Positions 17,869 to 33,312 of a stretch of 64,000 bases of DNA are shown piece after piece. Numbering within the stretch: the first letter of the stretch is position 1; the number at the start of each line of letters is the position of its first letter. A program made the translations under genes and the position numbers. Location of the stretch: IMG/VR virus record IMGVR_UViG_3300027771_001853, positions 233,624 to 297,623 of that record. One strand, given 5' to 3'. The notes beneath the pieces are model-generated. The model did not search any database. It was not told the DNA's origin and worked only from the letters and a program-made list of their open reading frames with translations.

Positions 17869-18077
17869 GTTTGTTTTATTTTTAATTTGTTTACACAATA
17901 TCCCCTTCTGGGGGTTATCGATATGTTTTTTAACTATTAGTTTAGTTAATTTTTATACTCTTCCCAGTACTTAAAAGTATCTCTATCTTTTTTAGAACCG
18001 TGTATTACTGGTTTCCAAAATACAAATAAAGCTACAACTATTAATATAAATGCTATCATAATGTTTTTTTAAGTTAG

Positions 18078-18149: not shown

Positions 18150-18216
18150 ATAAATTACTATTTACTGATTAATTCAGATACAAATATACGTAGAAAAAAT
18201 CTAATACACAAGTAAA

Positions 18217-18465
18217 TTACTTCTTAATTTCGTTATATCTATACTTTTTTGATATTTCTCTATTAAAGAACTTACCCTGACTTTCTGACATCCTAAACTT
18301 AGTAAATAAATTATGTGGTACATTATGGTATTGGTATTTTCTACCACCTTTAAATGTAACTAATAGTTCACTAGTCTTAGTATCATACTCTGTAGCGAAT
18401 ATATTACTTGACGCGTACTCATTTAAAATTCTGGTTCCTTTTATTTCTTCTTTCGTTGGTTTCAT
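18217..18465 (-). CDS. KTSC domain protein
   Basis: SSNIFATEYD..TSELLVTFKGGRKYQYHNVP..LF..F..SESQGKFFNREI. Confidence 0.88.
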   Translation of the reverse strand: MKPTKEEIKGTRILNEYASSNIFATEYDTKTSELLVTFKGGRKYQYHNVPHNLFTKFRMSESQGKFFNREISKKYRYNEIKK

Positions 18466-18496: not shown

Positions 18497-20374
18497 TTAT
18501 TCCTTAACCTCTTCATATTCCACATCGGTAGTACTTTCTTCTACTGGTGGTTCTTGATTTACGTCCTCTTCCCCTTCTTGGGTAGTTTCGTAAAGTTTAG
18601 TACTTATTTCGTTCCAATCACTAGTTAGTTTTTCCTTTAAGGTTGTTATAGTTTCCATATTTTTACCTTCTACGGCCTCTTTTAGTTCTTTTAAAGCACT
18701 TTCTAATTTAGTTTTATCTGAGTCGTCTAATTTATCACCAAATTCTTCAATTTGTTTTTCTGTTTGGAAGATTAGTCCATCTGCCTCATTTAAAGTATTA
18801 ACATCTTCTTTCTTTTTCTTGTCTTCTTCTGCGTTTGCTTCAGCATCTGATTTCATTTTTTGGATTTCCTCATCAGACAAACTACTACCGGACTCAATCT
18901 TAATATTATGTTCTTTACCGGTACCCTTATCTTTAGCTTTAACAGTTATTATCCCATTAGCGTCAATATCAAATGTTACCTCAACCTGTGGAATCCCTCT
19001 AGGTGCTGGTGGAATGTCTGTTAGTTGGAACCTACCTAGTGTTCTATTATCTGGTGCCATAGACCTTTCTCCTTGTAAGACATGAATGTCTACCGCTGGT
19101 TGGTTATTTACCGCTGTGGAGAAAACTTCACTTTTGGACGTTGGTATTGTTGTGTTTGATTCTATTAACGTTGTCATCACACCACCCATAGTTTCTATAC
19201 CAAGTGATAGTGGGGTCACATCTAACAATAAAACATCCTTAACATCACCAACTAACACACCACCTTGTATAGCAGCTCCCATCGCTACAACCTCATCCGG
19301 ATTAACTCCTTTAGATGGTTTCTTTTTAAATAATTTTTCTACAGCTGATTGTATGATTGGTATCCTAGTTGACCCACCAACTAAAATTATCTCATCAATC
19401 TCAGTAACTTTTAAACCAGCATCTTTAATTGCCTTTCTACAAGGTGTTAAACTTTTCTTAACTAAAAATTCAACCATAGACTCAAACTTCGCTCTAGATA
19501 ATGTACGAACTAGATGTTTTGGTCCAGTAGTGTCGGCAGTTAAATAAGGTAAGTTTAGTTCTGTAGTTGTTGAGTTAGAGAGTTCTACTTTTGCTTTTTC
19601 AGCCGCTTCTCTTAGACGTTGTAAAGCAGAAGGGTCTTCACTTATATTCATACCACTTTCTTCCTTAAACTCTTCAAGTAACCAATCAACAATCACCTCA
19701 TCAAAATTATCACCACCTAAATGTGTGTCACCATTTGTGGATTTTACTTCGAACACACCACCAGATATTTCCAATATAGAAATGTCAAAAGTACCACCAC
19801 CTAAATCATAAACAGCGATAGTTTTATCTTTTGTCTCGTTTATACCGTACGCTAATGCTGCAGCAGTTGGTTCGTTGATGATTCTTAGTACGTTTAGTCC
19901 CGCGATTTCACCAGCTTCTTTTGTAGCTTGTCTTTGTGAATCATTAAAGTATGCTGGTACCGTTATTACCGCGTCTGTTACCGTTTCTCCTAGGTATTCT
20001 TCTGCTGTTTTTTTCAGATTCTGTAATATTACAGCTGATATTTCTTGTGGAACGTATGTTTTACCATCTACAACCACATTAACATTTTCGTCACTACCTT
20101 TTTTTACTGTATAAGCCATTTTTTTAGCTTCTTTACTTACCTCATCAAACTTACTACCTATAAAACGTTTTACAGAGTAAATTGTATTTGTTGGGTTTGT
20201 TACTGCTTGTCTTTTTGCTGGGTCCCCAACAACTCTATCACCATCTTTAAACGATATAACCGAAGGTGTTGTTCTTTTACCCTCCGAATTAACAATTATT
20301 GTGGGTGACCCACCTTCTACTACTGAAACACATGAGTTTGTAGTACCTAAATCTATTCCAATTACTTTTGTCAT
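18497..20374 (-). CDS. dnaK: Hsp70 chaperone DnaK
   Basis: [62 protein letters not shown]. Confidence 0.98.
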
Positions 20375-20375
20375 A

Positions 20376-20837
20376 TTAACTTATTTTTATTTGTTTTTTA
20401 TTATTACTATTTTTTACTAATTTAGGTATAACTATACCTAAAACACCATTTTCTACCTTTGCTTTAATATTGTCGATATCAACATTATCTGGTAACCTAT
20501 AATCCAACTCTAGTTCTGTATTATAGAACTCTCTTCTTAAATAAGTTATTTTCTCCGCTTTACTGTCATATAAGTCATGATGCTCTTCAGCTACTGACGT
20601 TACCACTAAAACCCCATTTTCTACTATTACCGTGATATCGTTTTTTGTTAGTCCTGGGGCTTGCATTTCTAACATATAAGATTTGTTAGTTTCTAACAAA
20701 TTACTCCTATAACTACCTAACCCACCATAACTCGAATCTTTAGTTTTGTTAAAGTTTTCATCTTGTTGTTCATGAAGGTTATCAGTAAAGAAATCATCAA
20801 TGACTCTAGTTAAATCTGCTTTTGTTTTGTAATCCAT
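20376..20837 (-). CDS. small heat-shock protein (Hsp20, alpha-crystallin domain)
   Basis: [19 protein letters not shown] and [25 protein letters not shown]; start reassigned to MDYKTK. Confidence 0.92.
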
Positions 20838-20916
20838 AATTTTATTCTTTTTTATAAATTTATTAATTTTTATTCTTTTATTCAAGTAATTTATATTACT
20901 TTTACATTACCTTTAA

Positions 20917-20933
20917 TACAATTACTGTACCAA
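20917..20933 (-). promoter_or_regulatory. sigma54-like -24/-12 element upstream of hsp20-dnaK
   Basis: Minus strand TTGGTACAGTAATTGTA = GG-N10-GT, one change from TGGCAC-N5-TTGC. Confidence 0.4.
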
Positions 20934-20954
20934 AAGCAAATATATAAAAAAATA

Positions 20955-20969
20955 ATGACATAATGTCAT
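20955..20969. promoter_or_regulatory. operator-like inverted repeat between divergent hsp20/dnaK and clpC
   Basis: ATGACAT-A-ATGTCAT, with an extra ATGTCA half-site about 20 nt downstream. Confidence 0.5.
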
Positions 20970-21025
20970 ATTAGGAAGTAAAAATGTCACTAGGTTAATA
21001 TTTTTACATTTTATAAAACATTTTA

Positions 21026-21033
21026 TATATTTG
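21026..21033 (+). promoter_or_regulatory. Bacteroidota RpoD-type -7 element for clpC
   Basis: TATATTTG matches TAnnTTTG, 24 nt upstream of ATG. Confidence 0.65.
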
Positions 21034-21057
21034 TTTAAACAATTTAAATTATAATAT

Positions 21058-23106
21058 ATGAAAGAAATAATAAAATCGTCATTCTCGGGTATCGAAGAAG
21101 ATGGAGCTCAAAGTAAAAAACCAAAGAAAAGTAAATCAGAGAAAACATCTAGAACACCCATATTAGATAACTTTTCTAGAGATTTAATAAAATTAGCTAG
21201 TGAAGGAAAATTAGACCCTGTGGTCGGTAGACAAGCTGAAATAACTAGAGTAGCACAAATATTATGTAGGAGAAAGAAAAATAATCCTGTTTTGATAGGT
21301 GGTCCTGGTTGTGGTAAAACAGCTTTGGCTGAGGGATTGGCACTTAAAATACATAGTGGTAAATGCCCACGTAACTTATTAGATAAAAAAATAGTTGCAT
21401 TAGAACTAACTAGTTTAGTTGCTGGTACAAAATACAGGGGACAATTCGAAGAAAGAATGAAAGCTGTATTGGAGGAATTAAGGGATAATCCAGATATTAT
21501 AATTTTTATAGACGAATTACATACTGTCGTAGGTACAGGAAATTCATCTGGTTCACTAGATGCAGCTAATATCTTTAAACCAGCTTTAGCTAGAGGTGAA
21601 CTACAATGTATAGGAGCTACCACATTAGATGAGTATAGGGAGAATATAGAAAAGGATGGTGCATTAGAAAGAAGGTTCCAAAAAGTTATGGTAGAACCAA
21701 CCACTGTAGAGGAAACATTAAAGATATTAACCAACCTTAAATCGAAATACGAAGACCACCATAAAGTGGTTATTAGTAACGAAATACTAAAACTTTGTGT
21801 TCAATTAGCTGAAAGATATATAACACATAGAGAATTTCCTGATAAAGCTATCGATATAATGGATGAGGTTGGTGCTAAGGTACAAGTAGATATAGAGTTC
21901 CCAGATGAAATAGAAAATTTACGTAAGAGCATTGGTAAGTTGGGTGATGAGAAAAAATCAGTAGTTAAGTCACAACAATATGAAAAGGCAGCACACCTTA
22001 GAGATAAGGAATTAAAATTAATAACTAAGTTGGATGATTTAAAACTTGCGTGGGAAATAGAAATGGAGGAGCAAAGGACAGTTGTAAGTGTGGACGATTT
22101 ATACACTGTGGTTTCTCAGATGACAAAAATACCATTAGCTAGATTATCTGAAAATGAAATGGCTAGTTTAATAGAATTAGAATCACAGTTAAAAAACTAT
22201 GTAGTTGGTCAAGATGAAGCTATTGAAAAAGTTTGTAAAGCTATAAGAAGAAATAGAGTTGGTATTAGAGATGGTTCTAAACCTATAGGTACGTTTATGT
22301 TTTTAGGTCAAACAGGTATAGGTAAAACACATTTAGCTAAATCACTAGCAAAAGAAATATTTGGTTCTGAAGATTCTCTTATTAGGGTAGATATGTCAGA
22401 ATATCAAGAAAAATTTAACACTTCTAGGTTGATAGGTTCTCCTCCTGGTTACGTTGGGTACAACCAAGGTGGTCAATTAACTGAAGCCGTTAGAAATAAA
22501 CCCTACAGTGTTGTATTATTTGACGAGATAGAGAAAGCACATCCAGATGTTTTTAACGTACTTCTACAGGTGTTCGATGATGGGCATATGACTGATGGTA
22601 TGGGTAGAGTTATTAATTTTAAAAATACGTTAATAATTATGACATCCAATATTGGTGTTAAGAAACTACAGGAGTTTGGTAGTGGTATAGGTTTTGATAC
22701 CTCCGCTAGATTAGAGAAAAAAGAAGAAGCGATGAAAGATATTATAGCATCACAATTAAAAAAATCTTTTAGTCCAGAATTCCTAAACAGGGTAGACGAC
22801 ACTATTGTATTTAACCAGTTAGATGAAAAGAACATAGAAGGTATTGTAGAAATGGAACTTAACAACCTTAAGAAAAGATTATTAGATAAAGATTACAATA
22901 TAACGTTCAATGCTTCGGTTAAGAAATTTATAGCTAAAGAATCGTATGATGAAAAGTTTGGTGCAAGACCATTAAAAAGAATGATTCAAAATAAAATAGA
23001 GGACTTTATTTCAGAAGAAATTTTAAAAGGTAAAATAAAAGAAAAAAGCCGTTATTCTATTAGTATGGATAAAAAGACTGAGAAACCTAAATTAAAGAGT
23101 CTTTAA
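21058..23106 (+). CDS. clpC: ClpC-type AAA+ unfoldase lacking the N-terminal Clp-repeat domain
   Basis: GGPGCGKT, IFIDELH, AGTKYRGQFE, UVR-like QQYEKAAHLRDKE, GQTGIGKT, PPGYVGY, LFDEIEK, ClpP-docking GIGF; only about 30 residues before the first ATPase-proximal helix. Confidence 0.9.
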   Translation: MKEIIKSSFSGIEEDGAQSKKPKKSKSEKTSRTPILDNFSRDLIKLASEGKLDPVVGRQAEITRVAQILCRRKKNNPVLIGGPGCGKTALAEGLALKIHSGKCPRNLLDKKIVALELTSLVAGTKYRGQFEERMKAVLEELRDNPDIIIFIDELHTVVGTGNSSGSLDAANIFKPALARGELQCIGATTLDEYRENIEKDGALERRFQKVMVEPTTVEETLKILTNLKSKYEDHHKVVISNEILKLCVQLAERYITHREFPDKAIDIMDEVGAKVQVDIEFPDEIENLRKSIGKLGDEKKSVVKSQQYEKAAHLRDKELKLITKLDDLKLAWEIEMEEQRTVVSVDDLYTVVSQMTKIPLARLSENEMASLIELESQLKNYVVGQDEAIEKVCKAIRRNRVGIRDGSKPIGTFMFLGQTGIGKTHLAKSLAKEIFGSEDSLIRVDMSEYQEKFNTSRLIGSPPGYVGYNQGGQLTEAVRNKPYSVVLFDEIEKAHPDVFNVLLQVFDDGHMTDGMGRVINFKNTLIIMTSNIGVKKLQEFGSGIGFDTSARLEKKEEAMKDIIASQLKKSFSPEFLNRVDDTIVFNQLDEKNIEGIVEMELNNLKKRLLDKDYNITFNASVKKFIAKESYDEKFGARPLKRMIQNKIEDFISEEILKGKIKEKSRYSISMDKKTEKPKLKSL

Positions 23107-26100
23107 ATTGTCATCACAACAACCCTTAACTTTTCTACAGAAACAACACCAATAATCCTAATTGTGTTATAGTTCATTATAGTAATGGTCACAGACGCGT
23201 CTCCAAGTAGTTTCATATCTCCACTAGCCCCATCGGTACTACCAATTAAGGAAATTAACACATCTCTACTATTAAGGTTGTGTGTCACATAAATCGAAGA
23301 ACCCACACCTAGGATGAAAGTGTTAAAATGGTCGGTAGTATATTTTCTAGCTAGTCCCATCTCGGTACTACCTGATGAAAGTGTACTACTTGGTGATGGG
23401 ATTTTTATTGAACCTGAACCTTGTGTATTTGCTGAGTAGACTGTTGACCCTGTTATCCACCCATTTGATATACTTATCCCTCTATCATCAGGGGTATTAA
23501 GCTCGACGTTACCAATAGTAGCTTTTAATACTAGTTTAGTACCTTTTACTTCTGATATTATCTCACTGTCACCAAATTTAGTTTTACCTTCTTCCGATTC
23601 TATTGTACTTTTACCACCTAGAGTGATATATGAACTTGCGTGTACACTTGTGGCTGAAACAGTATTACCGGTTAAGAATGTAGCCGTTATACCACCAATC
23701 ACATCTAGTTTACCATCTTCACCACCACCTTTCAGTCCAGAATTTAATGTTAATACACCATCTACAGTTGTATCACCACTAATGTTAGTTGTCCCACTAA
23801 ATGTTACCGGAACTCGTCCAAAACCTACAGAGTATGGCCAAATAACAACTATATTATCATCTGCTCTAAATAAGGGAGTACCAGGGTATGTGGTAGCGGT
23901 TATTGTTAAACCACCATTAATTGTAACATTTTTATTAAATTTACTATCCTCAGAGAATGAAGTCACACCAGAAACTCTTAATGCCCCATCTAAAATAGTG
24001 TTTCCTGTTACTTCAAATTGAGTGGGGGTACTAGCGTTTCTAAATCTAGCGATAAGTAGTTCACTTCCTTTTTCATCGCCATCAGGTGACCCTTGTATCC
24101 TTAAACTATCCTTGGTGGTACCATTATTATTTATTGTTAATCTACTACTAAAGTCTTGGTTAGACTCGTACCCACCAAAACCAGACGGTGTTCCAACCAT
24201 AACACTATCACCACTAATTGTTAATGTTTGATTTGTTGAACTACCTGTGAAGATACCAAATGGTGTATAACTACCATGACCAACGGCTATCCCAGAAGGT
24301 GATAGTTTTATCTGAGCTAGATTATACAATGGGTTTATGTTTTCAGATGTGGATTTTACCACTAAACCTGCTCCCACATTACTTCTACCTAAGAAATGAG
24401 CTACCACACTATTTTTACATGCCGCACTTAACGCTGGTTGTAAATCACTAGCTTCGATAGAAAGTGCTGCTGATGGGATGAAAGACAATCGTTGAGGGGT
24501 TACAGCTAAACCACTAGTTATTTGTGTTGTACTGGCTAGAATAATATTAGTACCATCTGGTCCTTCACCGGTTGCACCACAAGCGGTGATGTTTGCTGTG
24601 ACCAAACTACAAGCACTTAACACCCCTAAGACTTGGGTATTACCCGATATCAGACCACCGGAAGTGGTTGAGGACCTGGAGGAACTTGAGGTTTTAAAGT
24701 CTTGGAAATCCTTTACCTTAATAGCTCCGAACCCACCCGGTTTATTAGGGTCTAACTCTCTAACTAGAATTTGTGTTAACGTTGTTGAGGTCATTGCTGA
24801 CTGTACGTTTAATAAATTTGTGTATGACGTATCAGCACTATAAGCGAATATATCTTGTCCCGCAAGTATACTACTGTTGACCGCACTTGGTGCTATATGA
24901 TGGTTATACCCAGCTAATACCGCTGAGTTATTTCCAGTAATATGGTTGTTTCTACCTGCAAGTACGGATGACGAATTACCGTTAATAAGATTTTTTTGCC
25001 CTCCTAATATTGTAGAATATTGTGAAAGGGTACTAGCACTATTTAAAGAACCATTAAGTATTGTGTTGTATTGTTGTATGTTGGATATTGAATTGGCGGT
25101 AATAACTATTAGGTTTTGATTACCGTTAACTATTGTATTGTATGAGTTCTGGGTGGAAGTTCTGACTGGGTCAGCACCAGGTACCATCTGTACAGTATTT
25201 GTCCTACCAATAATGTTGTTGGTATTACCATTAATTATTGAATTACTTTTTGGTTGGTACGATGTTATTGTCTGATTTTGGCCATTGAGTATCTGGTTAT
25301 TTTGACTTTCTTTCAGACCACCCTTAGTATCGATAGTATTATAGTAACCATTTAGTATGGTCCCATATGATGTGGCTCCTGACTTTATGCGGTTATTTAC
25401 TCCAGTTCCTATAAGATTAGCCGTCCATCCACTTATCGCATTACCATATCCACCGGCAATTACATTACCTACACCACCCGCACGTCCACCGGAAGCCGTA
25501 CTAAAACCAAATTGTCCTGATATTTTATTCCAAGCTCCACTAATAATAGTTGATATGGAACCACTAAGAATGTGGTTACCGGTACCACCTACAACTGTAT
25601 TACCAATATAAACTGATGCATTTGAACCTCCAGCCCAGAATTTGTCTTTAGGTCTTATTAGGTTGGTACTCCCTATGGTACCCCCACTAAGCATATCACC
25701 ACCACCAAGAATTTGTGACCACTCAGAGGTTATAACGTTTTCATTAGGTCCTCCTGGTGATGTCGGGTTCCATGAATTTATCGGTCCTGCCCATTTATAT
25801 GGTGAAAGAAAGTTATTACATGTATCTGCTGTAACTGTTGTCCCCGAATTAGTATATAAATAAAGAGTACACCCTATTGTATGTGCAGAAACAACATAAC
25901 TATCTCCACTCATAAATTGTGGCTGTACTGAACCTGGTACTGGTGCCCATCTTGCTCTACCATCTGCATTTACACCAGCTAGGAATACGTTTGGACTTCC
26001 GGAATAGGCTGGACTATTAGGGATTATTATATTATTAGCTGCACCTCCATGATAATGGAATGGTCTGTCACCATCCCCAGTGTCTGTCCACACATTTAAT

Positions 26101-28529
26101 CCGTGTGTGTATGTTGTTTGGGAGGTTCTAGCTGTTATTGCGTTACCCCCTAATATTGCTGATGATGATGCTGTGTTAAATATAGTATTTCCAGTACCAC
26201 CTAGTATGTGACCACCATCAGCTAAAACTGTACTACCTGAACTACTTAATATAGTCGCAAATTTAGCACCACCAACATAATTACGAGTACCAGAAACATG
26301 ACTAAATGTAGTAGCCGAATTTAGATTATTATGATGACCGTGAATATTATTCCAACTAGAATTGTATACAAAATTTGTAATACCAAAAATTGTATTACCA
26401 GAACTACTTATTTCTAAATTACTTAACCCTTTTAAATGTGAATGTTCTCCCGCTCCTACACCACCAATAATGTTATTACTTTGACCTAACAGACTTGAAA
26501 AATTCCCAGAGGATAATCTCAGATTACCTTGTCCCATGAAAAAACCATGTTTACCCCCAAAAGTTATGTTGCCAACTCCGAACATAAGGTTGTACCCACC
26601 ATTAGTAGAGTTAAGTGCAGCATTGGATGAACCCCCTAGTATGTTGGTGTAGGTTTCAAAGTTATTATTCATACTCCCTCCTTGTACGTTACCATACAAA
26701 CCAGTAGTTTGGTTAAGTCCTAAAACTGGCATTATTGAATTGGTTCCAATCCCAAACTTATAAGGTCCTGCATTAGAACAAGTGTCAGCGGTTAAGGTTG
26801 TACCTGAATTAGTTACACCATACCAAGTACACCCACTTGTGTAGGCAGTTAACATATACACGTCAGAACCACTAAAACTAGTTATCCCACTTGGGATTAG
26901 ATTTGCTAAATTTTTCCACTTTGCGTGACCGTCATTATCATGAGAAACTAAAACTCTACCTAATCCTTGGTCTGCGTTTATACCGTGATATTGAAGCCAG
27001 TTACCGTTTGGTGTGTTTCCAGCTACATCAGAATTAACATTTAACCCTCTTAAATATGTTGTTTGAGCCGACATAGCGGTTAATTGTGAGGCCCCTATAA
27101 TCGCGGATGATATTGCTGTTTTTTCAATAGTATTTCCACTACCACCAACAATAACAACATCACTATTTTCATGTACCCTATTAAGAGTACCACCTACTAT
27201 GACTGAACTCTCACTACCATCCAAATCATTATTATTACCACCCACTATTGCACTATAGGTAGAAGCTGAAATTTCATTCTGAGTACCCCCTAGTATAGCA
27301 CTTCTAGTACTACCACTTATAACGTTAACTCCACCACCACCTATAAAACTTGCAGTACTGTATTTAAATTTATTAGCAGTACCTCCGACTATAACCGACT
27401 GTAGGCTCCCCGACATCACACTGTTAATACCACCGACTATAGCTCCGTATGCACTACCGTGTAAAAAATGGTTACTACCACCAACAATAGCACTGTAATA
27501 TGAAGGGACTCTAACAGTAGCTATTATCTTAGAACTAGTGGAACCAAGAATACTACTATATGATTCACCGGATATGGTATTTAATATACCACCAGCTATA
27601 ACATTATGTTGGTCATTTGAACCGGCTACTATTTTATTTTGTTTTCCAGCAAAAATACCTGATGAAGTGAACCCACCTTGTATAATATTACTATTACCAG
27701 CAGCGATTACATTGTCTTCTGAATTTATGCCCGACATAACTATATTATGTCTACCACCACCAATAACACTATATTTAGCGTTGGCTTGGTTTGCTCCTAG
27801 TTTTGGTTCTATAGATTGTAGTGCTTTTCCATAACGATATGGTCCAAAATCTTCACACGTATTAGCACTAAACGTTTGGTGTCCTGTATTAGAGGAATAA
27901 ACTAAGAATGTCGTACATCCTGTCGTATACCCACTTACTAAGAATGTTGCACCAGTTAAATTAACAGGTATAATATCATTCCCTCTTTTTACGCTATTAG
28001 TGGTACTATCCCAAATTAAATTGTAATCACCACCAACAGCAACATCCCTAACCATTAAATCACCAGCAATATCTAAAGTCGCTAATGGAGCTAACTTTCT
28101 AATACCTACAGTACCACCACTAGTTATTACTAATTGATGGTCTTGGGCAAAAGTAGTTCCAGTGGCGATAGTATATGTGTTGTAACTTCCCGTACCATTA
28201 CTAAAATCTACACCTGCTGCCCATATCGCGTTACCGACACCTATATCGCCTTTCCTATGTACTATGTAGGAATCTGTTTCATTTCTTGTTTGGAAGTTAA
28301 GTATAGCGTCACCCCCATCAGATACTATGGCTGCTTCTGAAGAGGCACCATCTCTAAATAATTCTAAATCCCAATCTGGTAAACTAGTACCCATACCAAT
28401 TTTCCCACCACTTCTAACGATAAAGTCAGCTATCCCAGTTCCTGAGTGTACAACACTAAATCCAGTGTATGAATCATTATCACCTTGACCCCAAACCCTT
28501 AAAGAGCCATATAAATCATTAATTCCCAT
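23103..28529 (-). CDS. giant fibre/adhesin-like protein (1808 aa) with Hep/Hag-like SxIxGGxxNxI repeats
   Basis: Dozens of about 14-15 aa repeats (e.g. SAILGGTQNEI, SVIVGGTLNRV), G(I/M)GT..P...L repeats near the N-terminus, C-terminal THNLNSRDVLISL domain. Confidence 0.8.
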   Translation of the reverse strand: MGINDLYGSLRVWGQGDNDSYTGFSVVHSGTGIADFIVRSGGKIGMGTSLPDWDLELFRDGASSEAAIVSDGGDAILNFQTRNETDSYIVHRKGDIGVGNAIWAAGVDFSNGTGSYNTYTIATGTTFAQDHQLVITSGGTVGIRKLAPLATLDIAGDLMVRDVAVGGDYNLIWDSTTNSVKRGNDIIPVNLTGATFLVSGYTTGCTTFLVYSSNTGHQTFSANTCEDFGPYRYGKALQSIEPKLGANQANAKYSVIGGGRHNIVMSGINSEDNVIAAGNSNIIQGGFTSSGIFAGKQNKIVAGSNDQHNVIAGGILNTISGESYSSILGSTSSKIIATVRVPSYYSAIVGGSNHFLHGSAYGAIVGGINSVMSGSLQSVIVGGTANKFKYSTASFIGGGGVNVISGSTRSAILGGTQNEISASTYSAIVGGNNNDLDGSESSVIVGGTLNRVHENSDVVIVGGSGNTIEKTAISSAIIGASQLTAMSAQTTYLRGLNVNSDVAGNTPNGNWLQYHGINADQGLGRVLVSHDNDGHAKWKNLANLIPSGITSFSGSDVYMLTAYTSGCTWYGVTNSGTTLTADTCSNAGPYKFGIGTNSIMPVLGLNQTTGLYGNVQGGSMNNNFETYTNILGGSSNAALNSTNGGYNLMFGVGNITFGGKHGFFMGQGNLRLSSGNFSSLLGQSNNIIGGVGAGEHSHLKGLSNLEISSSGNTIFGITNFVYNSSWNNIHGHHNNLNSATTFSHVSGTRNYVGGAKFATILSSSGSTVLADGGHILGGTGNTIFNTASSSAILGGNAITARTSQTTYTHGLNVWTDTGDGDRPFHYHGGAANNIIIPNSPAYSGSPNVFLAGVNADGRARWAPVPGSVQPQFMSGDSYVVSAHTIGCTLYLYTNSGTTVTADTCNNFLSPYKWAGPINSWNPTSPGGPNENVITSEWSQILGGGDMLSGGTIGSTNLIRPKDKFWAGGSNASVYIGNTVVGGTGNHILSGSISTIISGAWNKISGQFGFSTASGGRAGGVGNVIAGGYGNAISGWTANLIGTGVNNRIKSGATSYGTILNGYYNTIDTKGGLKESQNNQILNGQNQTITSYQPKSNSIINGNTNNIIGRTNTVQMVPGADPVRTSTQNSYNTIVNGNQNLIVITANSISNIQQYNTILNGSLNSASTLSQYSTILGGQKNLINGNSSSVLAGRNNHITGNNSAVLAGYNHHIAPSAVNSSILAGQDIFAYSADTSYTNLLNVQSAMTSTTLTQILVRELDPNKPGGFGAIKVKDFQDFKTSSSSRSSTTSGGLISGNTQVLGVLSACSLVTANITACGATGEGPDGTNIILASTTQITSGLAVTPQRLSFIPSAALSIEASDLQPALSAACKNSVVAHFLGRSNVGAGLVVKSTSENINPLYNLAQIKLSPSGIAVGHGSYTPFGIFTGSSTNQTLTISGDSVMVGTPSGFGGYESNQDFSSRLTINNNGTTKDSLRIQGSPDGDEKGSELLIARFRNASTPTQFEVTGNTILDGALRVSGVTSFSEDSKFNKNVTINGGLTITATTYPGTPLFRADDNIVVIWPYSVGFGRVPVTFSGTTNISGDTTVDGVLTLNSGLKGGGEDGKLDVIGGITATFLTGNTVSATSVHASSYITLGGKSTIESEEGKTKFGDSEIISEVKGTKLVLKATIGNVELNTPDDRGISISNGWITGSTVYSANTQGSGSIKIPSPSSTLSSGSTEMGLARKYTTDHFNTFILGVGSSIYVTHNLNSRDVLISLIGSTDGASGDMKLLGDASVTITIMNYNTIRIIGVVSVEKLRVVVMTI

Positions 28530-28530
28530 A

Positions 28531-31500
28531 TTATCCTATTATTACAGTTTTTATATTATCTTTATTCATAGTAAGCTCTACAGTTATAGTATTTAATGTT
28601 ACATATACAATCGTTGCATCGATTCTCTGACCTGCTTCTTTCCAAAGATTCACTACCACATCTAGTGTATCTAAATTATGTGTTATTGTTTCAGCTACAT
28701 TCGCTGTATAATTTCTTGTGTCCACAAATTTCTGTGGTACATTCCACGCGTATAATGTAGTTGCTGATATTGTTCCAGCTGTTAAACCACACATATATGT
28801 GGTATTAGGTTGTGTAGCTGTTAAATTGTTACACCCTATAATCGCTGACGATACAGCAGTATATTCAATCGTGTTTCCAGTACCACCAACAATATGACCA
28901 AAGTTGCCATCTACTGTATTACCGGAACCACCTAATATTGTCCCATACCCACCGGAAGGTCCAATACTATTACTTCTACCATTAAGGATTGTAGCGTAGT
29001 CTCGCATGATAGAATTATTAGTACCATTACCAATCATACTAAAATATCCTCCGTTCAAATGGCCGATTGTATTACCGGAACCACCTAAAATAACATCATA
29101 CCCTAGACCGGTTGCCCGATTACCAAGTCCACCCAATATGGATTTATGTCCAGAATTAACCACATTTCCCCAAGCTCCTGATGTATAGTCGTCAGTTATA
29201 ACATTACTATCACCACCAACAATACTACTATTAGAGATTCTTCTTATATCGTTTTGTTTACCTGCACCAATAAAATTATAGTGACCACCACCAACTATTA
29301 GATTACTCATTCCACCTACTATAGCACTAACCTTTGTTCTTCCTGTGTAATCTGTTTTTTGTGTTATAAAATTAAGTTCACCACCACCTATAAATGAACT
29401 GGTACTACCTGTAATGGTATTTCTATACCCACCAACTACTACTGAGGTGTCTGCTGATTGGATGATATTGTTATATCCGGCACCTATAAACACACCGGAC
29501 GTAGAATTGTTACTTCTAGAACCAGAGTAAGGACTATTAATTAAATTATGTTGTCCAGCAACAATTACTGAACTATTAGATTCACCACTTATTGAGTTAT
29601 TTCTTCCACCTAAAATAGCAACTGTATTTGCTGATATAATCTGGTGGTGGTGCCCATTTAAAATCGTACTGTAACTTGACCCTGATGTTATCCTATGTAG
29701 TGAACCGTTACCAATTAAATTATAACCACCCTCTTTACCTGGTCTTAATTGTGCTTTATTACCAGTTATTCTATTTTGTTTACCGTTTATAATTGTACTC
29801 CATTGTGCACCATCTTCTAAATAATTGGCGTCACCATTTAAAATAGTACCACCACGAACTGAAGCGTTATACCCACTATAACCATTTAAAATGGTTCTAT
29901 GGTTGTAAGGTTTCATAGAATCAGTATAGGTATTCCAGAAGGTGGTGTTTACAATTTTATTTTCTTGTCCATTACCTATGAAGTCATGTATTCCTTCGAT
30001 ATCATTACTGATACCATTAACAACTGAACCAAACGTACCCGGAGCTCTATTAAATAACCCCCCTTGTACTGTAGAGAAATTCCCCACTGTGGTATTTGTA
30101 CCTAAAACTGGTTTTATTGAGTTTGTGCCCGCTCCATATTGGTAAGGTCCTAGATTAGAACATGTATTTGCGGTTAATACCGCTCCTTGACATAAGGTTC
30201 CACCTGTTAGTGTCATATAAACCGTACACCCACTTGTGTAAGCGGAGGCCATATAACACCCACCAGACACGTTAGTTATGCCACTAGGTATAAATGGTAA
30301 ACTTATCCATTTTGCGTGACCATCATCAGTATTAGACATTAAGAATTTACCATTCCCTGGTGAAGCATAATTACCATGGTACCTAAATGGTCTGTGTTCT
30401 GTATTAGATACCCCACCTAGTGCTTGGGTTATGTCAGTATGAGCATCCAAACCTCTTGTATATGTTGTTTCGGAAGAATAAGCGATTAATCCCACACCGG
30501 CTGAGATGGTTGACGCACTAGCTGTAGATGATATTGTGTTTGCACTCGAGTTTAATATAACACCGTACACAGCATTAACCTTATTAAGTTTACCCGCCAA
30601 AATACTACCGTGTTCTCTAAATACTTTATTTTTAGTACCACCAACAATTGAAGCTGTTGATGCACTTATTTCATTCTGGTAACCACCTAATATAGAAGAG
30701 TAACCCCTACCCCCTTCTTTTACCAAAAAGCCATCTGTTAGACCACTTGTAATAACGTTTTTATAACCACCACCTACAAACCCCCAACCAATATCTCTTA
30801 TTACGTTCGATTGACCACCCGCTATAGTTGATTTAGTAGCTCCACTTATTAAATTTGTTTGTCCACCAGCAATCGTATTCCCAAACCTATCATTAACAGT
30901 AGGGTTACCACTCGACCCAACGTAAGGGTTTAATATTTTATTAGATACCCCACCTAGTATGGCAGATGTAGACGCTGAAGATATTAAGTTATCTTTTCCA
31001 TTTACGATAACACTATTACTACTAGCTACATTGAGTCCTACCCCAAGAATACCACTACCAGCTATAGTATTACCAGAACCACCACCTATAGAAGCGTTTG
31101 TATTATCTGGGCTAATTACATTAAGGTACCCACCAGCGATATTAGAATACTGACCTCTGGCGATATTCTCCCCTAAACGTGGTCTAATTCCGGTGTAGTC
31201 CGGTGCAGTCTCATTAAAGACGTAAGGTGTCTCACCCGATAATTGTAAATTCCATTGTACACCGTCACTTCTATGAATATTAATAATACTTGGATGTCCA
31301 CCTAGGTTGGTACCCCATGATGTGTCGTCCACATATAAATCAGTAAATACTGTAGCTGAAGACGATACTGTACCCCACATTAGTTGGTTACTACATCCAC
31401 CTGTTTGTGATGCTGGTGGAGCTAAAACTAAAGTTTGTCCAGTGGTTGCTGGACCATACATTGGGAATGTATACCCTGAAGTGGCTTTTTCAAATTTTAT

Positions 31501-31866
31501 ACCACAGTCCCCACATGGTGTTATTGTACCCGCAGTTAAAGCTGAATCACAAAATTCAGGAAACACACTAAGAGTTAGAGTACCATCACCAAATGAATCA
31601 GTAATTGTAATACCAGAACCACCAATTAAACTATAAAAATTTAATGTACCGTTATCTGCAGCATAAGTTTTGCTATGGTAAACCCCGAAAGTACCTGCAG
31701 GACCAACATTAAGACCAATGGTGTCGTTAATCTTTTGATTTAACATCAAAAGACTCGTATCTAATTCGGCCCAACTTAGGACAGAACCTTTTGGTATTGC
31801 TTGTCCAGCTATGGGGGACGCATTTGAACGAGTAAAAAATTGACTCGGATATGGGGTTAAAGGCAT
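28531..31866 (-). CDS. fibre/adhesin-like protein (1111 aa), paralog of 23103..28529
   Basis: Same repeats and hinge (IPSGIT..SG...AYTSGCT...TANTCSN.GPY..G.GTNSI.PVLG); N-terminal KGSVLSWAELD; C-terminal THNLDTLDVVVNL. Confidence 0.8.
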   Translation of the reverse strand: MPLTPYPSQFFTRSNASPIAGQAIPKGSVLSWAELDTSLLMLNQKINDTIGLNVGPAGTFGVYHSKTYAADNGTLNFYSLIGGSGITITDSFGDGTLTLSVFPEFCDSALTAGTITPCGDCGIKFEKATSGYTFPMYGPATTGQTLVLAPPASQTGGCSNQLMWGTVSSSATVFTDLYVDDTSWGTNLGGHPSIINIHRSDGVQWNLQLSGETPYVFNETAPDYTGIRPRLGENIARGQYSNIAGGYLNVISPDNTNASIGGGSGNTIAGSGILGVGLNVASSNSVIVNGKDNLISSASTSAILGGVSNKILNPYVGSSGNPTVNDRFGNTIAGGQTNLISGATKSTIAGGQSNVIRDIGWGFVGGGYKNVITSGLTDGFLVKEGGRGYSSILGGYQNEISASTASIVGGTKNKVFREHGSILAGKLNKVNAVYGVILNSSANTISSTASASTISAGVGLIAYSSETTYTRGLDAHTDITQALGGVSNTEHRPFRYHGNYASPGNGKFLMSNTDDGHAKWISLPFIPSGITNVSGGCYMASAYTSGCTVYMTLTGGTLCQGAVLTANTCSNLGPYQYGAGTNSIKPVLGTNTTVGNFSTVQGGLFNRAPGTFGSVVNGISNDIEGIHDFIGNGQENKIVNTTFWNTYTDSMKPYNHRTILNGYSGYNASVRGGTILNGDANYLEDGAQWSTIINGKQNRITGNKAQLRPGKEGGYNLIGNGSLHRITSGSSYSTILNGHHHQIISANTVAILGGRNNSISGESNSSVIVAGQHNLINSPYSGSRSNNSTSGVFIGAGYNNIIQSADTSVVVGGYRNTITGSTSSFIGGGELNFITQKTDYTGRTKVSAIVGGMSNLIVGGGHYNFIGAGKQNDIRRISNSSIVGGDSNVITDDYTSGAWGNVVNSGHKSILGGLGNRATGLGYDVILGGSGNTIGHLNGGYFSMIGNGTNNSIMRDYATILNGRSNSIGPSGGYGTILGGSGNTVDGNFGHIVGGTGNTIEYTAVSSAIIGCNNLTATQPNTTYMCGLTAGTISATTLYAWNVPQKFVDTRNYTANVAETITHNLDTLDVVVNLWKEAGQRIDATIVYVTLNTITVELTMNKDNIKTVIIG

Positions 31867-31899
31867 AATATATCTTTTAATGATAAATATGCACGATGT

Positions 31900-32793
31900 T
31901 TAGAATAAATTAAAGTGGTTTGTGGGTTTTGATTTGTATTTGTATTTGTTTTCCCCTAGTATGTTGGTTACTTTTTTACCTAGAGTAAGAGCGTTAAATA
32001 CGTCCTCTACCACCACATACTCATTTTTGGTATGGTAATTGTAGTATCCAGCCGCAAAATTTAAACAACTAAAATCAAATTTCTTTTTTAACATCATAGT
32101 ATCGGTGTATGGGTGATTTAACCATTCTGTTATACCATGTTCTAAAATTACGTCTTTAGTTTTATTAATAAACTCACTATTTTCTTCAAATAATTTTACA
32201 CCCATTAATGAAATACTCATAGTATCGTTTTCTGTAGAATCAAATTGTAAGGCATAACCAACGTCTTTAAAAAAGTCTTCGTCAGCTTCTTTAGAACCGT
32301 GACACCCAGTTTCTTCAGCAACAGGTAGGAATATTTTACAAACATCCAATTCTTTTAATAGTTCCAAACATATAAAAACACCAGCTTTATCGTCACCACC
32401 TATACCAGTGGGTTCACCACTTATTTTTTCATAAGCTTTTAAAGCTAATTTTAATTCACCCTGTGCGTTAGGTAACATTTCTTCTTCTACTACCATATCT
32501 ACCTTTTCATGTACACTATCTAAATGAGCAACAAAACATGGGTAATATTCAGCTTTACCTTTGGTTATGTAGATGTTACCTAAACTGTCTATGTCCATAT
32601 CATCGAAACCTTTAGTGTTGGTTACTATGTATTCGATTAACTCGTCTTCTTCCCAAGTTTTAGTTGGGACAGATAAAATATTTTTTAACCTTGCCAGTTT
32701 TTCTTTGTGTTCATTAGAGTGATATTCGTCGTCAATATAATCATTTACCATATTAGTTTGATTTTTAAGGATGTGTTCTGTTGTTTTACTCAT
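31900..32793 (-). CDS. zinc peptidase, M28/M42-like
   Basis: VAHLDSVH, GIGGDDKAG, AEETGCHGS, FAAGYYNYHT; TATCTTTG promoter at 32809-32816 (minus). Confidence 0.85.
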   Translation of the reverse strand: MSKTTEHILKNQTNMVNDYIDDEYHSNEHKEKLARLKNILSVPTKTWEEDELIEYIVTNTKGFDDMDIDSLGNIYITKGKAEYYPCFVAHLDSVHEKVDMVVEEEMLPNAQGELKLALKAYEKISGEPTGIGGDDKAGVFICLELLKELDVCKIFLPVAEETGCHGSKEADEDFFKDVGYALQFDSTENDTMSISLMGVKLFEENSEFINKTKDVILEHGITEWLNHPYTDTMMLKKKFDFSCLNFAAGYYNYHTKNEYVVVEDVFNALTLGKKVTNILGENKYKYKSKPTNHFNLF

Positions 32794-32888
32794 AATATAT
32801 ATTTTAAGCAAAGATACACTTTATTTCTTTTAAACACCAATATAATTAAAATAATCCATAATTGTTTTGTCATTTTATAAAGTTTGTA

Positions 32889-32896
32889 TATATTTG
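32889..32896 (+). promoter_or_regulatory. Bacteroidota RpoD-type -7 element for tmRNA
   Basis: TATATTTG 6 nt upstream of the tmRNA 5' end. Confidence 0.75.
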
Positions 32897-32902
32897 TCTT
32901 AT

Positions 32903-33312
32903 GGGGGTGACTGGAATTGATTGGCATTATTTGGTTAATATCAGCACGTCAAGCCTGAATTAAGCTTGTAAAACTGATTCACACTTTCTAAACGGTGACG
33001 TATTAGATACTATGGCTACTCTTGGACTTGTCCGTGAAGAGTCATTAGCGACAGCGTAGTTAGACTACGAGGTTGTTACATCCCATCTAAAGAATTTAAG
33101 ATTTGTGTCTTTAGTTTTTGGGGTGTCGAATAGACAAATCGAACCCGGGAATATTACCCCACCGGTTTATGTTGGGCGGGTAGTTGAGACTGACTTGAAG
33201 GTTGTTTATTCTATAGGGTTAAGTCTGACAACAAATGAATGAACTAAACGTGTAGGATAGATATTTTTTGAAGATGAACAAGACGGGGGTTCGATACCCC
33301 CCACCTCCACCA
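32903..33312 (+). ncRNA. ssrA: transfer-messenger RNA
   Basis: 5' GGGGGTGACTGGAATTGA; 3' GACGGGGGTTCGATACCCCCCACCTCCACCA; acceptor GGGGGTG/CACCTCC with G3:U70 and A73, encoded CCA; internal tag ORF. Confidence 0.95.
32994..33059 (+). other. tmRNA tag reading frame (A)GDVLDTMATLGLVREESLATA-stop
   Basis: Open frame after CTAAAC ending in hydrophobic SLATA then TAG; resume codon inferred from Gly-start tags of Bacteroidota tmRNAs. Confidence 0.7.

What the first reader, a model, noticed from the sequence alone, without database searches (positions are those of the whole stretch)
18497..33312. Self-contained proteostasis set: Hsp20, DnaK, ClpC, peptidase and tmRNA within 15 kb
Seen: hsp20-dnaK divergent from clpC, then (across two fibre genes) a zinc peptidase divergent from ssrA, each with a TAnnTTTG element. 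No dnaJ, grpE, clpP or smpB is visible in the window. Inference: a phage-run tag-unfold-degrade circuit in which stalled products receive a phage-specific tag and are routed via the phage ClpC to host ClpP.
Basis: partly seen in the sequence, partly recalled or inferred. Interest (0 to 1): 0.66.

Follow-up and report, generated by a model that had tools for sequence, protein, structure and literature searches.

The report
Jumbo-phage protein-turnover island with private tmRNA tag
A 300-kb marine phage of Bacteroidota carries its own chaperones, a truncated ClpC unfolding motor, a peptidase and a working tmRNA that adds a tag twice as long as its hosts' tag; the genes are real and conserved, but the idea that the tag feeds the phage ClpC is still untested.

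Summary
Window 18497-33312 encodes Hsp20 and DnaK (one leftward unit), a divergent two-ring Clp ATPase, two paralogous repeat giants, a metallopeptidase and a divergent tmRNA (Rfam 89.6 bits; ARAGORN misses it).

The window is the end of a 297,623-bp marine virus record. That genome also encodes ClpP and DnaJ, but not SmpB or GrpE, so "host ClpP" is not required.

The ATPase is ClpC-type: ClpC-length M-domain, GIGF ClpP-docking loop, no N-domain. All 80 IMG/VR relatives share this form, while Bacteroidota ClpC sits in 854-900-aa frames.

The conserved order is portal-TerL-...-NTase-KTSC-[variable slot: UVR protein, sHsp or DnaK]-ClpC-peptidase-tmRNA. A tmRNA occurs in 37 of 50 relatives' records and in 4 of 4 near-complete ones.

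The tmRNAs keep G3:U70 and covarying stems. Their 21-22-aa tag (here GDVLDTMATLGLVREESLATA) shows coding-type constraint. Five Bacteroidota genomes give GENNYALAA or GEDNYALAA.

Routing of the tag to ClpC remains inference, and 4-5 relatives keep ClpC and peptidase without a tmRNA.

The lineage fits the published "moraphages", whose chaperones are described but whose tmRNA is not. I rate this a new variant of a known kind.

The parts
17057..17818 (-). Nucleotidyltransferase-fold protein (253 aa). It is a conserved left neighbour of the module; function unknown.
   Evidence: Weak PF01909 match, E 8e-4. phrog_36119, E 1e-41. Present in 77 of 80 related loci in the same position.
18217..18465 (-). 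KTSC-domain protein (82 aa), conserved next to clpC. Probably what is labelled 'Lysine-tRNA ligase' among the moraphage core genes.
   Evidence: PF13619, E 2.5e-18. Found in 77 related loci. The core VOG list is in PMC12619734.
18497..20374 (-). DnaK (Hsp70), 625 aa, full length.
   Evidence: PF00012, E 1.8e-258. NCBIfam NF001413 scores 989 bits, above its 648-bit cut-off. Nearest cellular relatives are all Bacteroidota, at 63-69% identity. Present beside clpC in only 6 of 80 related loci, with one more copy about 7 kb away in L068.
20376..20837 (-). Small heat-shock protein (Hsp20), 153 aa from the ATG. Its stop lies 1 nt before the dnaK start, so hsp20 and dnaK form one unit.
   Evidence: PF00011, E 2e-18; phrog_432. 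Translation shown.
20937..20944 (-). TATATTTG, a Bacteroidota-type -7 promoter element upstream of hsp20-dnaK.
   Evidence: This octamer is intergenic in 14 of its 47 genome copies.
21026..21033 (+). TATATTTG -7 element 25 nt upstream of the clpC ATG. It shares the context CATTTTATAAA-N6/7-TATATATTTGT with the ssrA promoter.
   Evidence: Sequences.
21058..23106 (+). N-domain-less ClpC-type Hsp100 unfoldase (682 aa). It has two AAA+ rings, a ClpC-length M-domain and a GIGF ClpP-docking loop.
   Evidence: Aligns in one stretch (28-663) to B. subtilis ClpC 155-789, E 7e-216, with GIGF opposite YVGF; ClpB aligns in two stretches. No Clp_N hit. Walker A/B motifs, pore loops and the GF of the docking loop are >=95% conserved in 77 sequences. 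All 80 relatives are 650-712 aa, and in nearly all a stop lies within about 100 nt upstream of the start. The Bacteroidota homologues lie in frames of 854-900 aa.
23103..28529 (-). 1808-aa repeat protein. It is a lineage-specific insertion between clpC and the peptidase and is not a proteostasis gene; possibly a fibre or adhesin.
   Evidence: No Pfam, PHROG or PDB match. Paralogous to the next ORF. Found only in L003 and L004.
28531..31866 (-). 1111-aa paralogue of the 1808-aa repeat protein.
31900..32793 (-). MH-clan (M42/M20-like) two-metal peptidase, 297 aa from the ATG. In 74 of 80 relatives it lies near clpC, usually directly beside it.
   Evidence: phrog_4191, E 5e-35. Matches TET1 (2cf4, E 8e-6) and PepT (3gb0). 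Pfam M42 scores 21.0 bits, below its 23.2-bit cut-off. Motifs H.D.VH, GIGGDdK, EETG, QfD and yHt are conserved in 70 sequences. Synteny.
32809..32816 (-). TATCTTTG, a candidate -7 element 16 nt upstream of the peptidase ATG.
32889..32896 (+). TATATTTG -7 element 6 nt before tmRNA position 1, with TTTG 19 nt upstream of it.
   Evidence: A TAnnTTTG lies within 50 nt upstream of the tmRNA in 31 of 38 family members.
32903..33312 (+). One-piece tmRNA (ssrA), 410 nt.
   Evidence: RF00023, 89.6 bits, covering model positions 1-374. Across the family the acceptor stem pairs at 259 of 259 positions over 13 distinct stems, G3:U70 is present in 37 of 37, and the T stem pairs at 162 of 165 positions over 16 distinct stems. 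Contigs from independent samples cover the junctions.
32994..33059 (+). Tag reading frame. The resume codon is GGT and the frame reads GDVLDTMATLGLVREESLATA (21 aa), ending at TAG (33057-33059).
   Evidence: The frame is conserved in all 38 family tmRNAs. Summed codon-position entropy is 19.1 / 11.6 / 25.3. The only indel is one codon long. Most members have 'TA' at -5/-4 before the resume codon. ARAGORN calls the same frame in 6 relatives.

Best explanation
This is the protein-turnover and folding island of a roughly 300-kb marine T4-like jumbo phage of Bacteroidota (probably Flavobacteriia). It fits the published 'moraphage' lineage.

The conserved core is an N-domain-less ClpC-type unfoldase, a two-metal aminopeptidase-like enzyme and a functional tmRNA. 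Hsp20-DnaK is an addition of this sub-clade in a variable slot that holds a UVR-motif protein or another sHsp in relatives. ClpP and DnaJ lie elsewhere in the genome.

Proposed working, with shown and inferred steps marked:
1. Host RNA polymerase transcribes ssrA, clpC and hsp20-dnaK from Bacteroidota-type promoters. The motifs are shown; their use is inferred.
2. The tmRNA is charged with alanine (G3:U70 is shown). With host SmpB and EF-Tu it rescues ribosomes stalled during infection and appends a phage-specific 21-aa tag. The peptide-level constraint is shown; tagging is inferred.
3. The N-less ClpC docks by its GIGF loop onto the phage ClpP, or onto host ClpP in relatives that lack one. 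Lacking the adaptor-binding N-domain, it acts outside host control. The tagged products are among its substrates. This is the least supported step and is inferred only from synteny.
4. The neighbouring peptidase trims the released peptides to amino acids (inferred).
5. Hsp20, DnaK and DnaJ hold and fold phage proteins, using host GrpE (inferred).
For: - Components and their motifs.
- Whole-genome content: ClpP and DnaJ present, SmpB and GrpE absent, only one AAA_2 ATPase, and no GroEL or RF-1 family protein.
- Synteny: the order ClpC-peptidase-tmRNA, always on the clpC strand and 2-6.5 kb downstream, holds across a family with 61-68% ClpC identity. A tmRNA occurs in 37 of 50 records and 4 of 4 near-complete ones.
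- The variable slot beside clpC always holds chaperone-type genes: a UVR-motif protein, Hsp20 or DnaK.
- tmRNA covariation and G3:U70.
- Tag under coding constraint and unlike the Bacteroidota tags.
- Two relatives carry SmpB.
- Host phylum from DnaK relatives and the promoter type.
- Bacteroidota ClpC lies in frames long enough for an N-domain.
- The lineage's chaperones are described in PMC12619734.
Against: - No experiment or RNA data: no RNA run holds the locus.
- The synteny is within one lineage and directly follows the collinear head and packaging block (portal, TerL), so it may be inherited order rather than functional coupling.
- 4-5 relatives with enough flank keep ClpC and peptidase without a tmRNA.
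- In other huge phages N-less ClpC and tmRNA are far apart, or the tmRNA is absent.
- ClpP is missing from one complete relative.
- The tag still ends in Ala with a non-polar penultimate residue, so host proteases might handle it.
Confidence: 0.55

Rival explanations
1. The genes are independent auxiliary functions that merely lie together. The tmRNA only boosts ribosome rescue, for example after host mRNA decay or RNase-based abortive-infection defences. It may also outcompete host tmRNA for SmpB. Tagged products are left to host proteases. ClpC-ClpP removes host or defence proteins, and the chaperones serve virion assembly.
For: - Each unit has its own promoter-like element.
- ClpC and peptidase persist without a tmRNA in L033, L035, L069 and L076.
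- There is no adjacency in other huge phages.
- Phage tmRNAs occur in phages with other protease sets, for example phage G with ClpX/ClpP (PMC12484599).
- A TLD-like molecule is reported to inhibit tmRNA, perhaps by titrating SmpB (PMC4131195).
Against: - The internal tag residues (K[LM]xAxGL[ILV]R..E) are under peptide-level constraint. Ribosome rescue alone would not require that.
- The gene order ClpC-peptidase-tmRNA is kept while the DNA downstream of the tmRNA is not collinear.
Confidence: 0.3
2. ClpC and the peptidase are head-morphogenesis factors, for example for scaffold removal or folding of capsid proteins. On this view their position next to portal and terminase reflects that role, and the tmRNA is a passenger.
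For: - The module directly follows portal (PF07230, E 7e-78) and TerL (phrog_2, E 2.5e-41) in a collinear block.
Against: - clpC is transcribed divergently from that block and has its own host-type promoter element.
- The lineage is reported to have a separate T4-type prohead core protease (PMC12619734).
- ClpP lies 170 kb away, next to metK.
Confidence: 0.08
3. Hsp20, DnaK and the Clp ATPase form a ClpB-type disaggregase team rather than a protease.
For: - hsp20-dnaK lies divergently next to the ATPase.
- The top NCBIfam hit by score is ClpB: 825 bits, below its 1232-bit cut-off.
Against: - The protein aligns with ClpC in one stretch and with ClpB only in two, so it lacks the long ClpB M-domain. 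It carries the GIGF ClpP-docking loop. That ClpB lacks this loop is from my own knowledge, not tested here.
- DnaK is absent from most relatives.
- A phage ClpP exists.
Confidence: 0.05
4. The tmRNA is host DNA, an assembly chimera or an integration-site remnant.
For: - Contig depth peaks at the 3' tRNA-like end, where contigs of other organisms also match.
- Many prophages integrate into ssrA (my own knowledge, not tested here).
Against: - It is full length, covering model positions 1-374.
- Its tag differs from the Bacteroidota tags.
- It is conserved in position and strand in 37 related records.
- Contigs from independent samples bridge peptidase to ssrA.
Confidence: 0.02

Closest known systems
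Moraphages (Perez-Hernandez et al., Arch Virol 2025, PMC12619734)
   Same: - Aquatic jumbo phages of 200-307 kb with T4-like structural genes and predicted Flavobacteriia hosts.
- Core genes include a Clp ATPase ('ClpA'), a 'putative peptidase' and a 'Lysine-tRNA ligase' (here an 82-aa KTSC domain).
- DnaJ is common, DnaK is in 8 of 25 genomes and HSP20 is in some.
- The same pattern is seen here.
   Different: - That paper does not mention a tmRNA, the missing N-domain, the ClpP gene or the conserved ClpC-peptidase-ssrA order.
- Its genomes come mostly from freshwater; this phage is marine.
- Membership was not tested by phylogeny because their sequences were not on hand.
Phage-encoded tmRNAs (mycobacteriophage Bxz1 group, Bacillus phage G, huge phages of Al-Shayeb et al. 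2020)
   Same: A full one-piece tmRNA carried by a large phage, sometimes with SmpB (PMC4131195, PMC7162821, PMC12484599).
   Different: - This is a family-wide tmRNA in fixed synteny with an N-less ClpC and a peptidase.
- Its tag is a conserved 21-22 aa, against 13 aa reported for phage G.
- ARAGORN, the tool used in those surveys, misses most of these tmRNAs.
Bacterial ClpC-ClpP (B. subtilis and S. aureus ClpC; Bacteroidota ClpC)
   Same: - Two AAA+ rings, a short M-domain with a UVR-like motif, and a (V/I)GF loop.
- 55-58% identity to Bacteroidota ClpC.
   Different: It lacks the N-terminal Clp_N domain. That domain binds adaptors such as MecA and phospho-arginine substrates and restrains activity; this role is established knowledge and was not tested here.
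Bacterial trans-translation with ClpXP/SspB degradation of SsrA-tagged proteins
   Same: An Ala-charged tmRNA, a resume codon preceded by a UA element, and a tag ending in a non-polar residue followed by Ala.
   Different: - The tag is twice as long and has a conserved internal motif.
- No phage ClpX was found: ClpC is the only AAA_2 ATPase in the genome.
- There is no SmpB in this genome.
TET (M42) aminopeptidases acting downstream of ATP-dependent proteases in archaea
   Same: An MH-clan two-metal peptidase encoded beside an unfoldase. The best PDB sequence match is TET1.
   Different: - The sequence similarity is only weak, and the Pfam M42 score is below its cut-off.
- Oligomeric state and substrate are unknown.

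Membership tests
tmRNA (Rfam RF00023) | Covariance-model score above the gathering threshold over the full model | tested here: met
   89.6 bits against a threshold of 47, covering model positions 1-374.
tmRNA (Rfam RF00023) | tRNA-like domain: a 7-bp acceptor stem with G3:U70, a T arm and a discriminator A | tested here: met
   Across the family, 259 of 259 acceptor positions pair over 13 distinct stems. G3:U70 is present in 37 of 37. The T stem pairs at 162 of 165 positions.
tmRNA (Rfam RF00023) | Internal tag reading frame with a resume codon and an in-frame stop | tested here: met
   A 21-22-aa frame is conserved in 38 of 38 members. Codon-position entropy is 19.1 / 11.6 / 25.3. ARAGORN agrees in 6 relatives.
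tmRNA (Rfam RF00023) | SmpB partner encoded by the same genome | tested here: not met
   There is no PF01668 match in the 297-kb record. SmpB is present in 2 of 5 long relatives, so host SmpB is presumed.
tmRNA (Rfam RF00023) | Alanylation and tagging activity | not testable with these tools
   This needs biochemistry or proteomics.
ClpC subfamily of Hsp100/Clp ATPases | Two AAA+ modules with Walker A/B motifs and pore loops | tested here: met
ClpC subfamily of Hsp100/Clp ATPases | Short (ClpC-length) M-domain | tested here: met
   A single alignment stretch of residues 28-663 against ClpC 155-789, whereas ClpB aligns in two stretches.
ClpC subfamily of Hsp100/Clp ATPases | ClpP-docking (I/V)GF loop | tested here: met
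   GIGF lies opposite YVGF of B. subtilis ClpC. The GF is >=95% conserved in 77 sequences.
ClpC subfamily of Hsp100/Clp ATPases | N-terminal Clp_N repeat domain | tested here: not met
   No Clp_N hit. The protein begins at the equivalent of ClpC residue ~150. All 80 relatives are N-less. I therefore file it as a ClpC-type, N-less variant, not as canonical ClpC.
ClpB disaggregase | Long M-domain, no ClpP loop, and the NCBIfam ClpB cut-off | tested here: not met
   825 bits against a cut-off of 1232. The alignment to ClpB is split, and a GIGF loop is present.
DnaK (Hsp70) | Equivalog model above its cut-off, full length | tested here: met
   NF001413 at 989 bits against a cut-off of 648, covering residues 1-624.
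Small heat-shock protein (Hsp20) | Alpha-crystallin domain | tested here: met
   PF00011 at 66.8 bits against a cut-off of 20.8.
ClpP | CLP_protease domain with the Ser-His-Asp triad | tested here: met
   PF00574, E 1.7e-58. GMAASMGS, HQ and RD align with the matching residues of solved ClpP 5g1q. The NCBIfam equivalog cut-off is not reached (235 bits against 361).
MH-clan metallopeptidase (M42/M20) | Family model above its cut-off | tested here: inconclusive
   PF05343 scores 21.0 bits against a cut-off of 23.2. TET1 matches at E 8e-6 and PepT at E 5e-4. phrog_4191 'peptidase' matches at E 5e-35.
MH-clan metallopeptidase (M42/M20) | Conserved metal-ligand and catalytic motifs (H, D, EE, D, H) | tested here: met
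   H.D.VH, GIGGDdK, EETG, QfD and yHt are >=95% or >=70% conserved in 70 sequences. The structure was not modelled.
Moraphage lineage | Monophyly with published moraphage TerL/MCP/PolB sequences | not tested
   Only gene content and genome size were compared.

The most novel reading that the evidence does not exclude
The family-specific 21-22-aa tag is a private degron. The phage tmRNA takes over host trans-translation, and the products are read only by the phage's adaptor-free N-less ClpC. Recognition could be direct or through a small conserved neighbour such as the KTSC or UVR-motif protein. ClpP then degrades the products and the adjacent aminopeptidase reduces them to amino acids. On this reading the phage runs an orthogonal tag-unfold-degrade-recycle pathway inside the host.
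Probability: 0.25. Interest if true: 0.78.

Novelty: new variant of a known kind. Interest (0 to 1): 0.55.

Why it matters
Phage tmRNAs and phage Clp or chaperone genes are each known, but what they do during infection is not.

This family offers a clean, testable case:
- a tag whose peptide sequence is under selection and differs from the host tag;
- an unfoldase stripped of its regulatory domain;
- a ClpP;
- a peptidase held in fixed order beside them.

If the tag is read by the phage ClpC, that would be a virus-owned protein-degradation code and a ready-made orthogonal degron and protease pair for Bacteroidota.

It also shows that ARAGORN-based surveys miss most tmRNAs of this abundant aquatic phage group.

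Tried and rejected
- ARAGORN on the window and the whole genome found no tmRNA and no tRNA. For the tmRNA this is a false negative: Rfam finds it, and ARAGORN detects only 10 of the 38 family tmRNAs.
- blastn of the tmRNA against GenBank phages gave no match. tblastn of ClpC, DnaK and the peptidase found no close cultured relative; the best matches were 55-63% to huge metagenomic phages and 33% to Cellulophaga phage peptidases.
- The loose TAnnTTTG count is not enriched in the window. The generic sigma-70 and terminator scans were at chance level.
- Pfam, PHROG and PDB sequence searches of the two giant ORFs gave nothing.
- Expression could not be checked: no RNA run holds the locus, and the laid runs are contigs only.
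- The ClpB-type disaggregase reading was rejected on M-domain length and the GIGF loop.
- Host contamination or an att-site remnant was rejected for the tmRNA.
- Not run, by choice:
  - The large protein searches, because the family scans settled the identities.
  - Complex prediction, because I do not claim a specific binding pair and the tag is shorter than 30 residues.
  - Structure prediction.
No alternative genetic code was used. Read laying was given 5,901 letters.

Full report
**What is there**

The finding's coordinates hold.
- DnaK lies on the minus strand at 18497-20374. It matches PF00012 at E 1.8e-258 and the NCBIfam DnaK equivalog at 989 bits, above its cut-off.
- Hsp20 lies at 20376-20837 from the likely ATG and matches PF00011 at E 2e-18. 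Its stop is one base from the dnaK start, so the two genes form one unit.
- A 682-aa two-ring Clp ATPase is transcribed divergently at 21058-23106.
- Two large minus-strand ORFs follow, of 1808 and 1111 aa. They are paralogues rich in GG-x-N repeats and match nothing in Pfam, PHROGs or the PDB. "Fibre" is plausible but unproven. They occur only in the two closest relatives.
- A metallopeptidase lies at 31900-32793 on the minus strand. Its real start is probably the ATG at 32793.
- A tmRNA is transcribed divergently from it at 32903-33312. It scores 89.6 bits against Rfam RF00023 over the whole model. ARAGORN does not see it.

**Promoter-like elements**

TATATTTG precedes hsp20, clpC and ssrA, and TATCTTTG precedes the peptidase.

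The loose pattern TAnnTTTG is at chance level in the window (94 found, 96.6 expected). The octamer TATATTTG, however, is intergenic in 14 of its 47 genome copies, although only about 5% of the genome is intergenic.

A TAnnTTTG lies within 50 nt upstream of the tmRNA in 31 of 38 family members. The ssrA site also has TTTG 19 nt upstream. That matches the Bacteroidota -33/-7 promoter layout as I know it from the literature.

**The genome**

The window is bases 233624-297623 of a 297,623-bp IMG/VR virus record that CheckV rates 93% complete.
- Outside the window the genome encodes a ClpP. It matches PF00574 at E 1.7e-58, and its Ser, His and Asp motifs align with the matching residues of a solved ClpP.
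- It also encodes a DnaJ with a J-domain and a DnaJ_C domain.
- It has no SmpB, GrpE, GroEL, RF-1/ArfB family protein or second AAA_2 ATPase.
- ARAGORN finds no tRNA gene in it.

It still depends on the host for SmpB and GrpE.

**The ATPase**

It aligns end to end (residues 28-663) with B. subtilis ClpC residues 155-789 in a single stretch. ClpB aligns in two stretches because of its longer M-domain.

It carries GIGF where ClpC has YVGF, the loop that docks on ClpP. Walker motifs, pore loops and the GF are at least 95% conserved in 77 distinct family sequences.

It has no Clp_N domain. All 80 related genes are 650-712 aa, and in nearly all a stop lies within about 100 nt upstream of the start. 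Bacteroidota homologues at 55-58% identity lie in frames of 854-900 aa.

Two unrelated huge phages, LR756502 and LR756508, also have N-less versions. I file the protein as a ClpC-type, ClpP-competent, N-less variant. It is not a ClpB.

**The family and its gene order**

More than 597 IMG/VR contigs encode relatives, and I analysed the best 80. The following order recurs:
- portal (T4 gp20-like), TerL and three conserved ORFs;
- NTase, then the KTSC protein;
- a variable slot;
- ClpC on the plus strand, then the peptidase;
- an unknown gene;
- the tmRNA on the plus strand.

The variable slot holds one of three things. It can be a small UVR-motif protein (PF02151, E 2.3e-15), an sHsp (PF00011, E 1.6e-12), or DnaK, with Hsp20 in the window's phage and its two closest relatives. 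Collinearity ends after the tmRNA.

In the window's phage the two giant ORFs are inserted between ClpC and the peptidase. DnaK-Hsp20 fills the variable slot.

Rfam finds a full tmRNA in 37 of 50 relatives' records and in all 4 that are at least 90% complete. It is always on the clpC strand, 2-6.5 kb downstream.

Most records without a tmRNA are cut short. Four or five have 7-10 kb of flank yet lack one: L033, L035, L069, L076 and perhaps L020.

Gene content among long relatives varies:

| Gene | Relatives with it |
|---|---|
| ClpP | 4 of 5 |
| SmpB | 2 of 5 |
| DnaJ | 8 of 10 |
| DnaK | 3 of 10 |

**The tmRNA and its tag**

Across the family the acceptor stem takes 13 different forms with 259 of 259 positions paired. 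G3:U70 is present in 37 of 37, and the T stem has 16 forms with 162 of 165 positions paired. This is what a working, alanine-accepting tmRNA should show.

One reading frame is conserved in all 38. It starts at GGN (GAY in two members) and is preceded in most members by TA at positions -5/-4. It runs 21 or 22 codons and ends in [VATG]-A in all but one member.

The consensus is G-[NED]-[VT]-[LFI]-[NA]-K-[LM]-x-A-x-G-L-[ILVT]-R-x-E-E-x-x-V-A. The window's tag is GDVLDTMATLGLVREESLATA.

Summed entropy by codon position is 19.1, 11.6 and 25.3, and the only indel is one codon long. That is the pattern of selection on a peptide. ARAGORN, where it does detect the gene, calls the same frame in six relatives.

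Five Bacteroidota genomes were chosen because their DnaK is closest to the phage's (63-69% identity, and all 80 best matches are Bacteroidota). They encode GENNYALAA or GEDNYALAA. The phage tag is therefore more than twice as long and has a conserved internal motif.

**The peptidase**

It belongs to the MH clan. Its best PDB sequence match is the M42 aminopeptidase TET1 (E 8e-6), followed by PepT. Pfam M42 falls just below its cut-off, and phrog_4191 "peptidase" matches at E 5e-35.

The expected metal-ligand motifs are conserved in 70 sequences. Its nearest GenBank phage homologues are in Cellulophaga phages, which fits a Flavobacteriia host.

**Environment and literature**

The stretch occurs in marine water, sediment and sponge metagenomes from at least 16 studies, and no RNA run holds it. 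Contigs from independent samples cover the giant ORF-peptidase-ssrA junctions without a difference.

The lineage fits the "moraphages" described in 2025 (PMC12619734). Those are 200-307-kb phages with T4-like structural genes and predicted Flavobacteriia hosts. Their core genes include a ClpA-like ATPase, a putative peptidase and a "Lysine-tRNA ligase". DnaJ is common, DnaK occurs in 8 of 25 genomes and HSP20 in some.

That paper does not mention a tmRNA. Phage tmRNAs as such are known from the Bxz1 group, phage G and huge phages (PMC4131195, PMC12484599, PMC7162821).

**How it most likely works**

Shown:
- the parts exist;
- their catalytic and structural motifs are intact and conserved;
- the tag peptide is under selection and differs from the host tag;
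- ClpC has a ClpP-docking loop and no N-domain;
- ClpC, peptidase and ssrA keep their order across the family;
- chaperone-type genes recur in the slot beside clpC.

Inferred:
- The phage tmRNA works with host SmpB to rescue ribosomes during infection and marks the released chains with the phage tag.
- The N-less ClpC works with phage ClpP, or with host ClpP, outside host adaptor control.
- Tagged chains are among its substrates.
- The peptidase finishes the job by releasing amino acids.
- Hsp20, DnaK and DnaJ assist folding of phage proteins.

The tag-to-ClpC step rests only on synteny within one lineage. It is weakened by relatives that keep ClpC without a tmRNA, and by the position of the module at the end of the collinear head and packaging block. 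I give the integrated model 0.55 overall and the specific private-degron reading about 0.25.

**Rivals**
- Independent auxiliary genes, with the tmRNA acting only in ribosome rescue or counter-defence: 0.3.
- Head-morphogenesis role for ClpC and the peptidase: 0.08.
- ClpB-like disaggregase team: 0.05. The M-domain length, the GIGF loop and the patchy presence of DnaK all speak against it.
- Host DNA or an att-site remnant: 0.02.

**Verdict**

The chaperone content of the lineage and the existence of phage tmRNAs are already published. Three things appear to be new:
- the family-wide N-less ClpC;
- its fixed order with a peptidase and a tmRNA;
- the conserved long tag.

I rate this a new variant of a known kind, with interest 0.55.

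Noticed in passing
window 32903-33312, and the tmRNAs of loci L006-L082: ARAGORN misses this tmRNA and 28 of the 38 in the family, while Rfam/Infernal finds them. Phage surveys that relied on ARAGORN probably under-count tmRNAs in this lineage.
   Followed up: yes
whole genome G000:C1:1-297623: ARAGORN finds no tRNA gene in a 297-kb phage genome that does carry a tmRNA. Several relatives show clusters of short tRNA-sized matches.
   Followed up: partly
L024:9442-9795 (-) and its cluster in 38 related loci: A 117-150-aa protein with UvrB/UvrC (UVR) motifs lies divergently upstream of clpC, in the slot where this phage has Hsp20-DnaK. It is a candidate ClpC partner of the McsA or ClpF kind.
   Followed up: partly
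window 17057-18465: An NTase-fold protein and an 82-aa KTSC-domain protein are conserved immediately left of the module in 77 of 80 loci. Further NTase paralogues lie downstream of the tmRNA in several relatives. The 'Lysine-tRNA ligase' core gene reported for moraphages is probably this KTSC domain alone.
   Followed up: partly
window 23103-31866: Two paralogous giant proteins (1808 and 1111 aa) with GG-x-N repeats are inserted between clpC and the peptidase. They occur only in this phage and its two closest relatives.
   Followed up: partly
window 20990-21036 and 32860-32900: The clpC and ssrA upstream regions share an extended motif, CATTTTATAAA-N6/7-TATATATTTGT. This suggests co-regulation.
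   Followed up: partly
loci L008-L082, the 15 nt before tmRNA position 1: Most relatives have a conserved leader, GTTCTTTGAAAATAT, directly before the mature 5' end. The window's phage lacks it and has the promoter element only 6 nt upstream.
   Followed up: no
3' ends of the 37 family tmRNAs with a complete 3' end: The terminal CCA is encoded in only 19 of 37, so the others would need CCA addition.
   Followed up: no
G028:C1:187024-187425 and G032:C1:23555-23968: Two complete relatives encode their own SmpB. One of them (G028) is the relative that lacks ClpP.
   Followed up: no
window 34406-36829 (-): An 807-aa protein with a peptidoglycan-binding domain and endolysin-like PHROG matches lies downstream of the tmRNA.
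   Followed up: no
window 33340-33612 (+): A 90-aa basic ORF lies directly after the tmRNA. It has no family match and no homologue in the related loci.
   Followed up: partly
G000:C1:187576-201114 (-): A single open frame of about 4,500 aa lies elsewhere in the genome.
   Followed up: no
LR756504.1 280507-280863 (locus L177): Another huge phage's tmRNA also seems to encode a long tag (frame ending ...NDNVNSFEQSILNELFAPVEMAVAA). The resume codon was not determined.
   Followed up: partly
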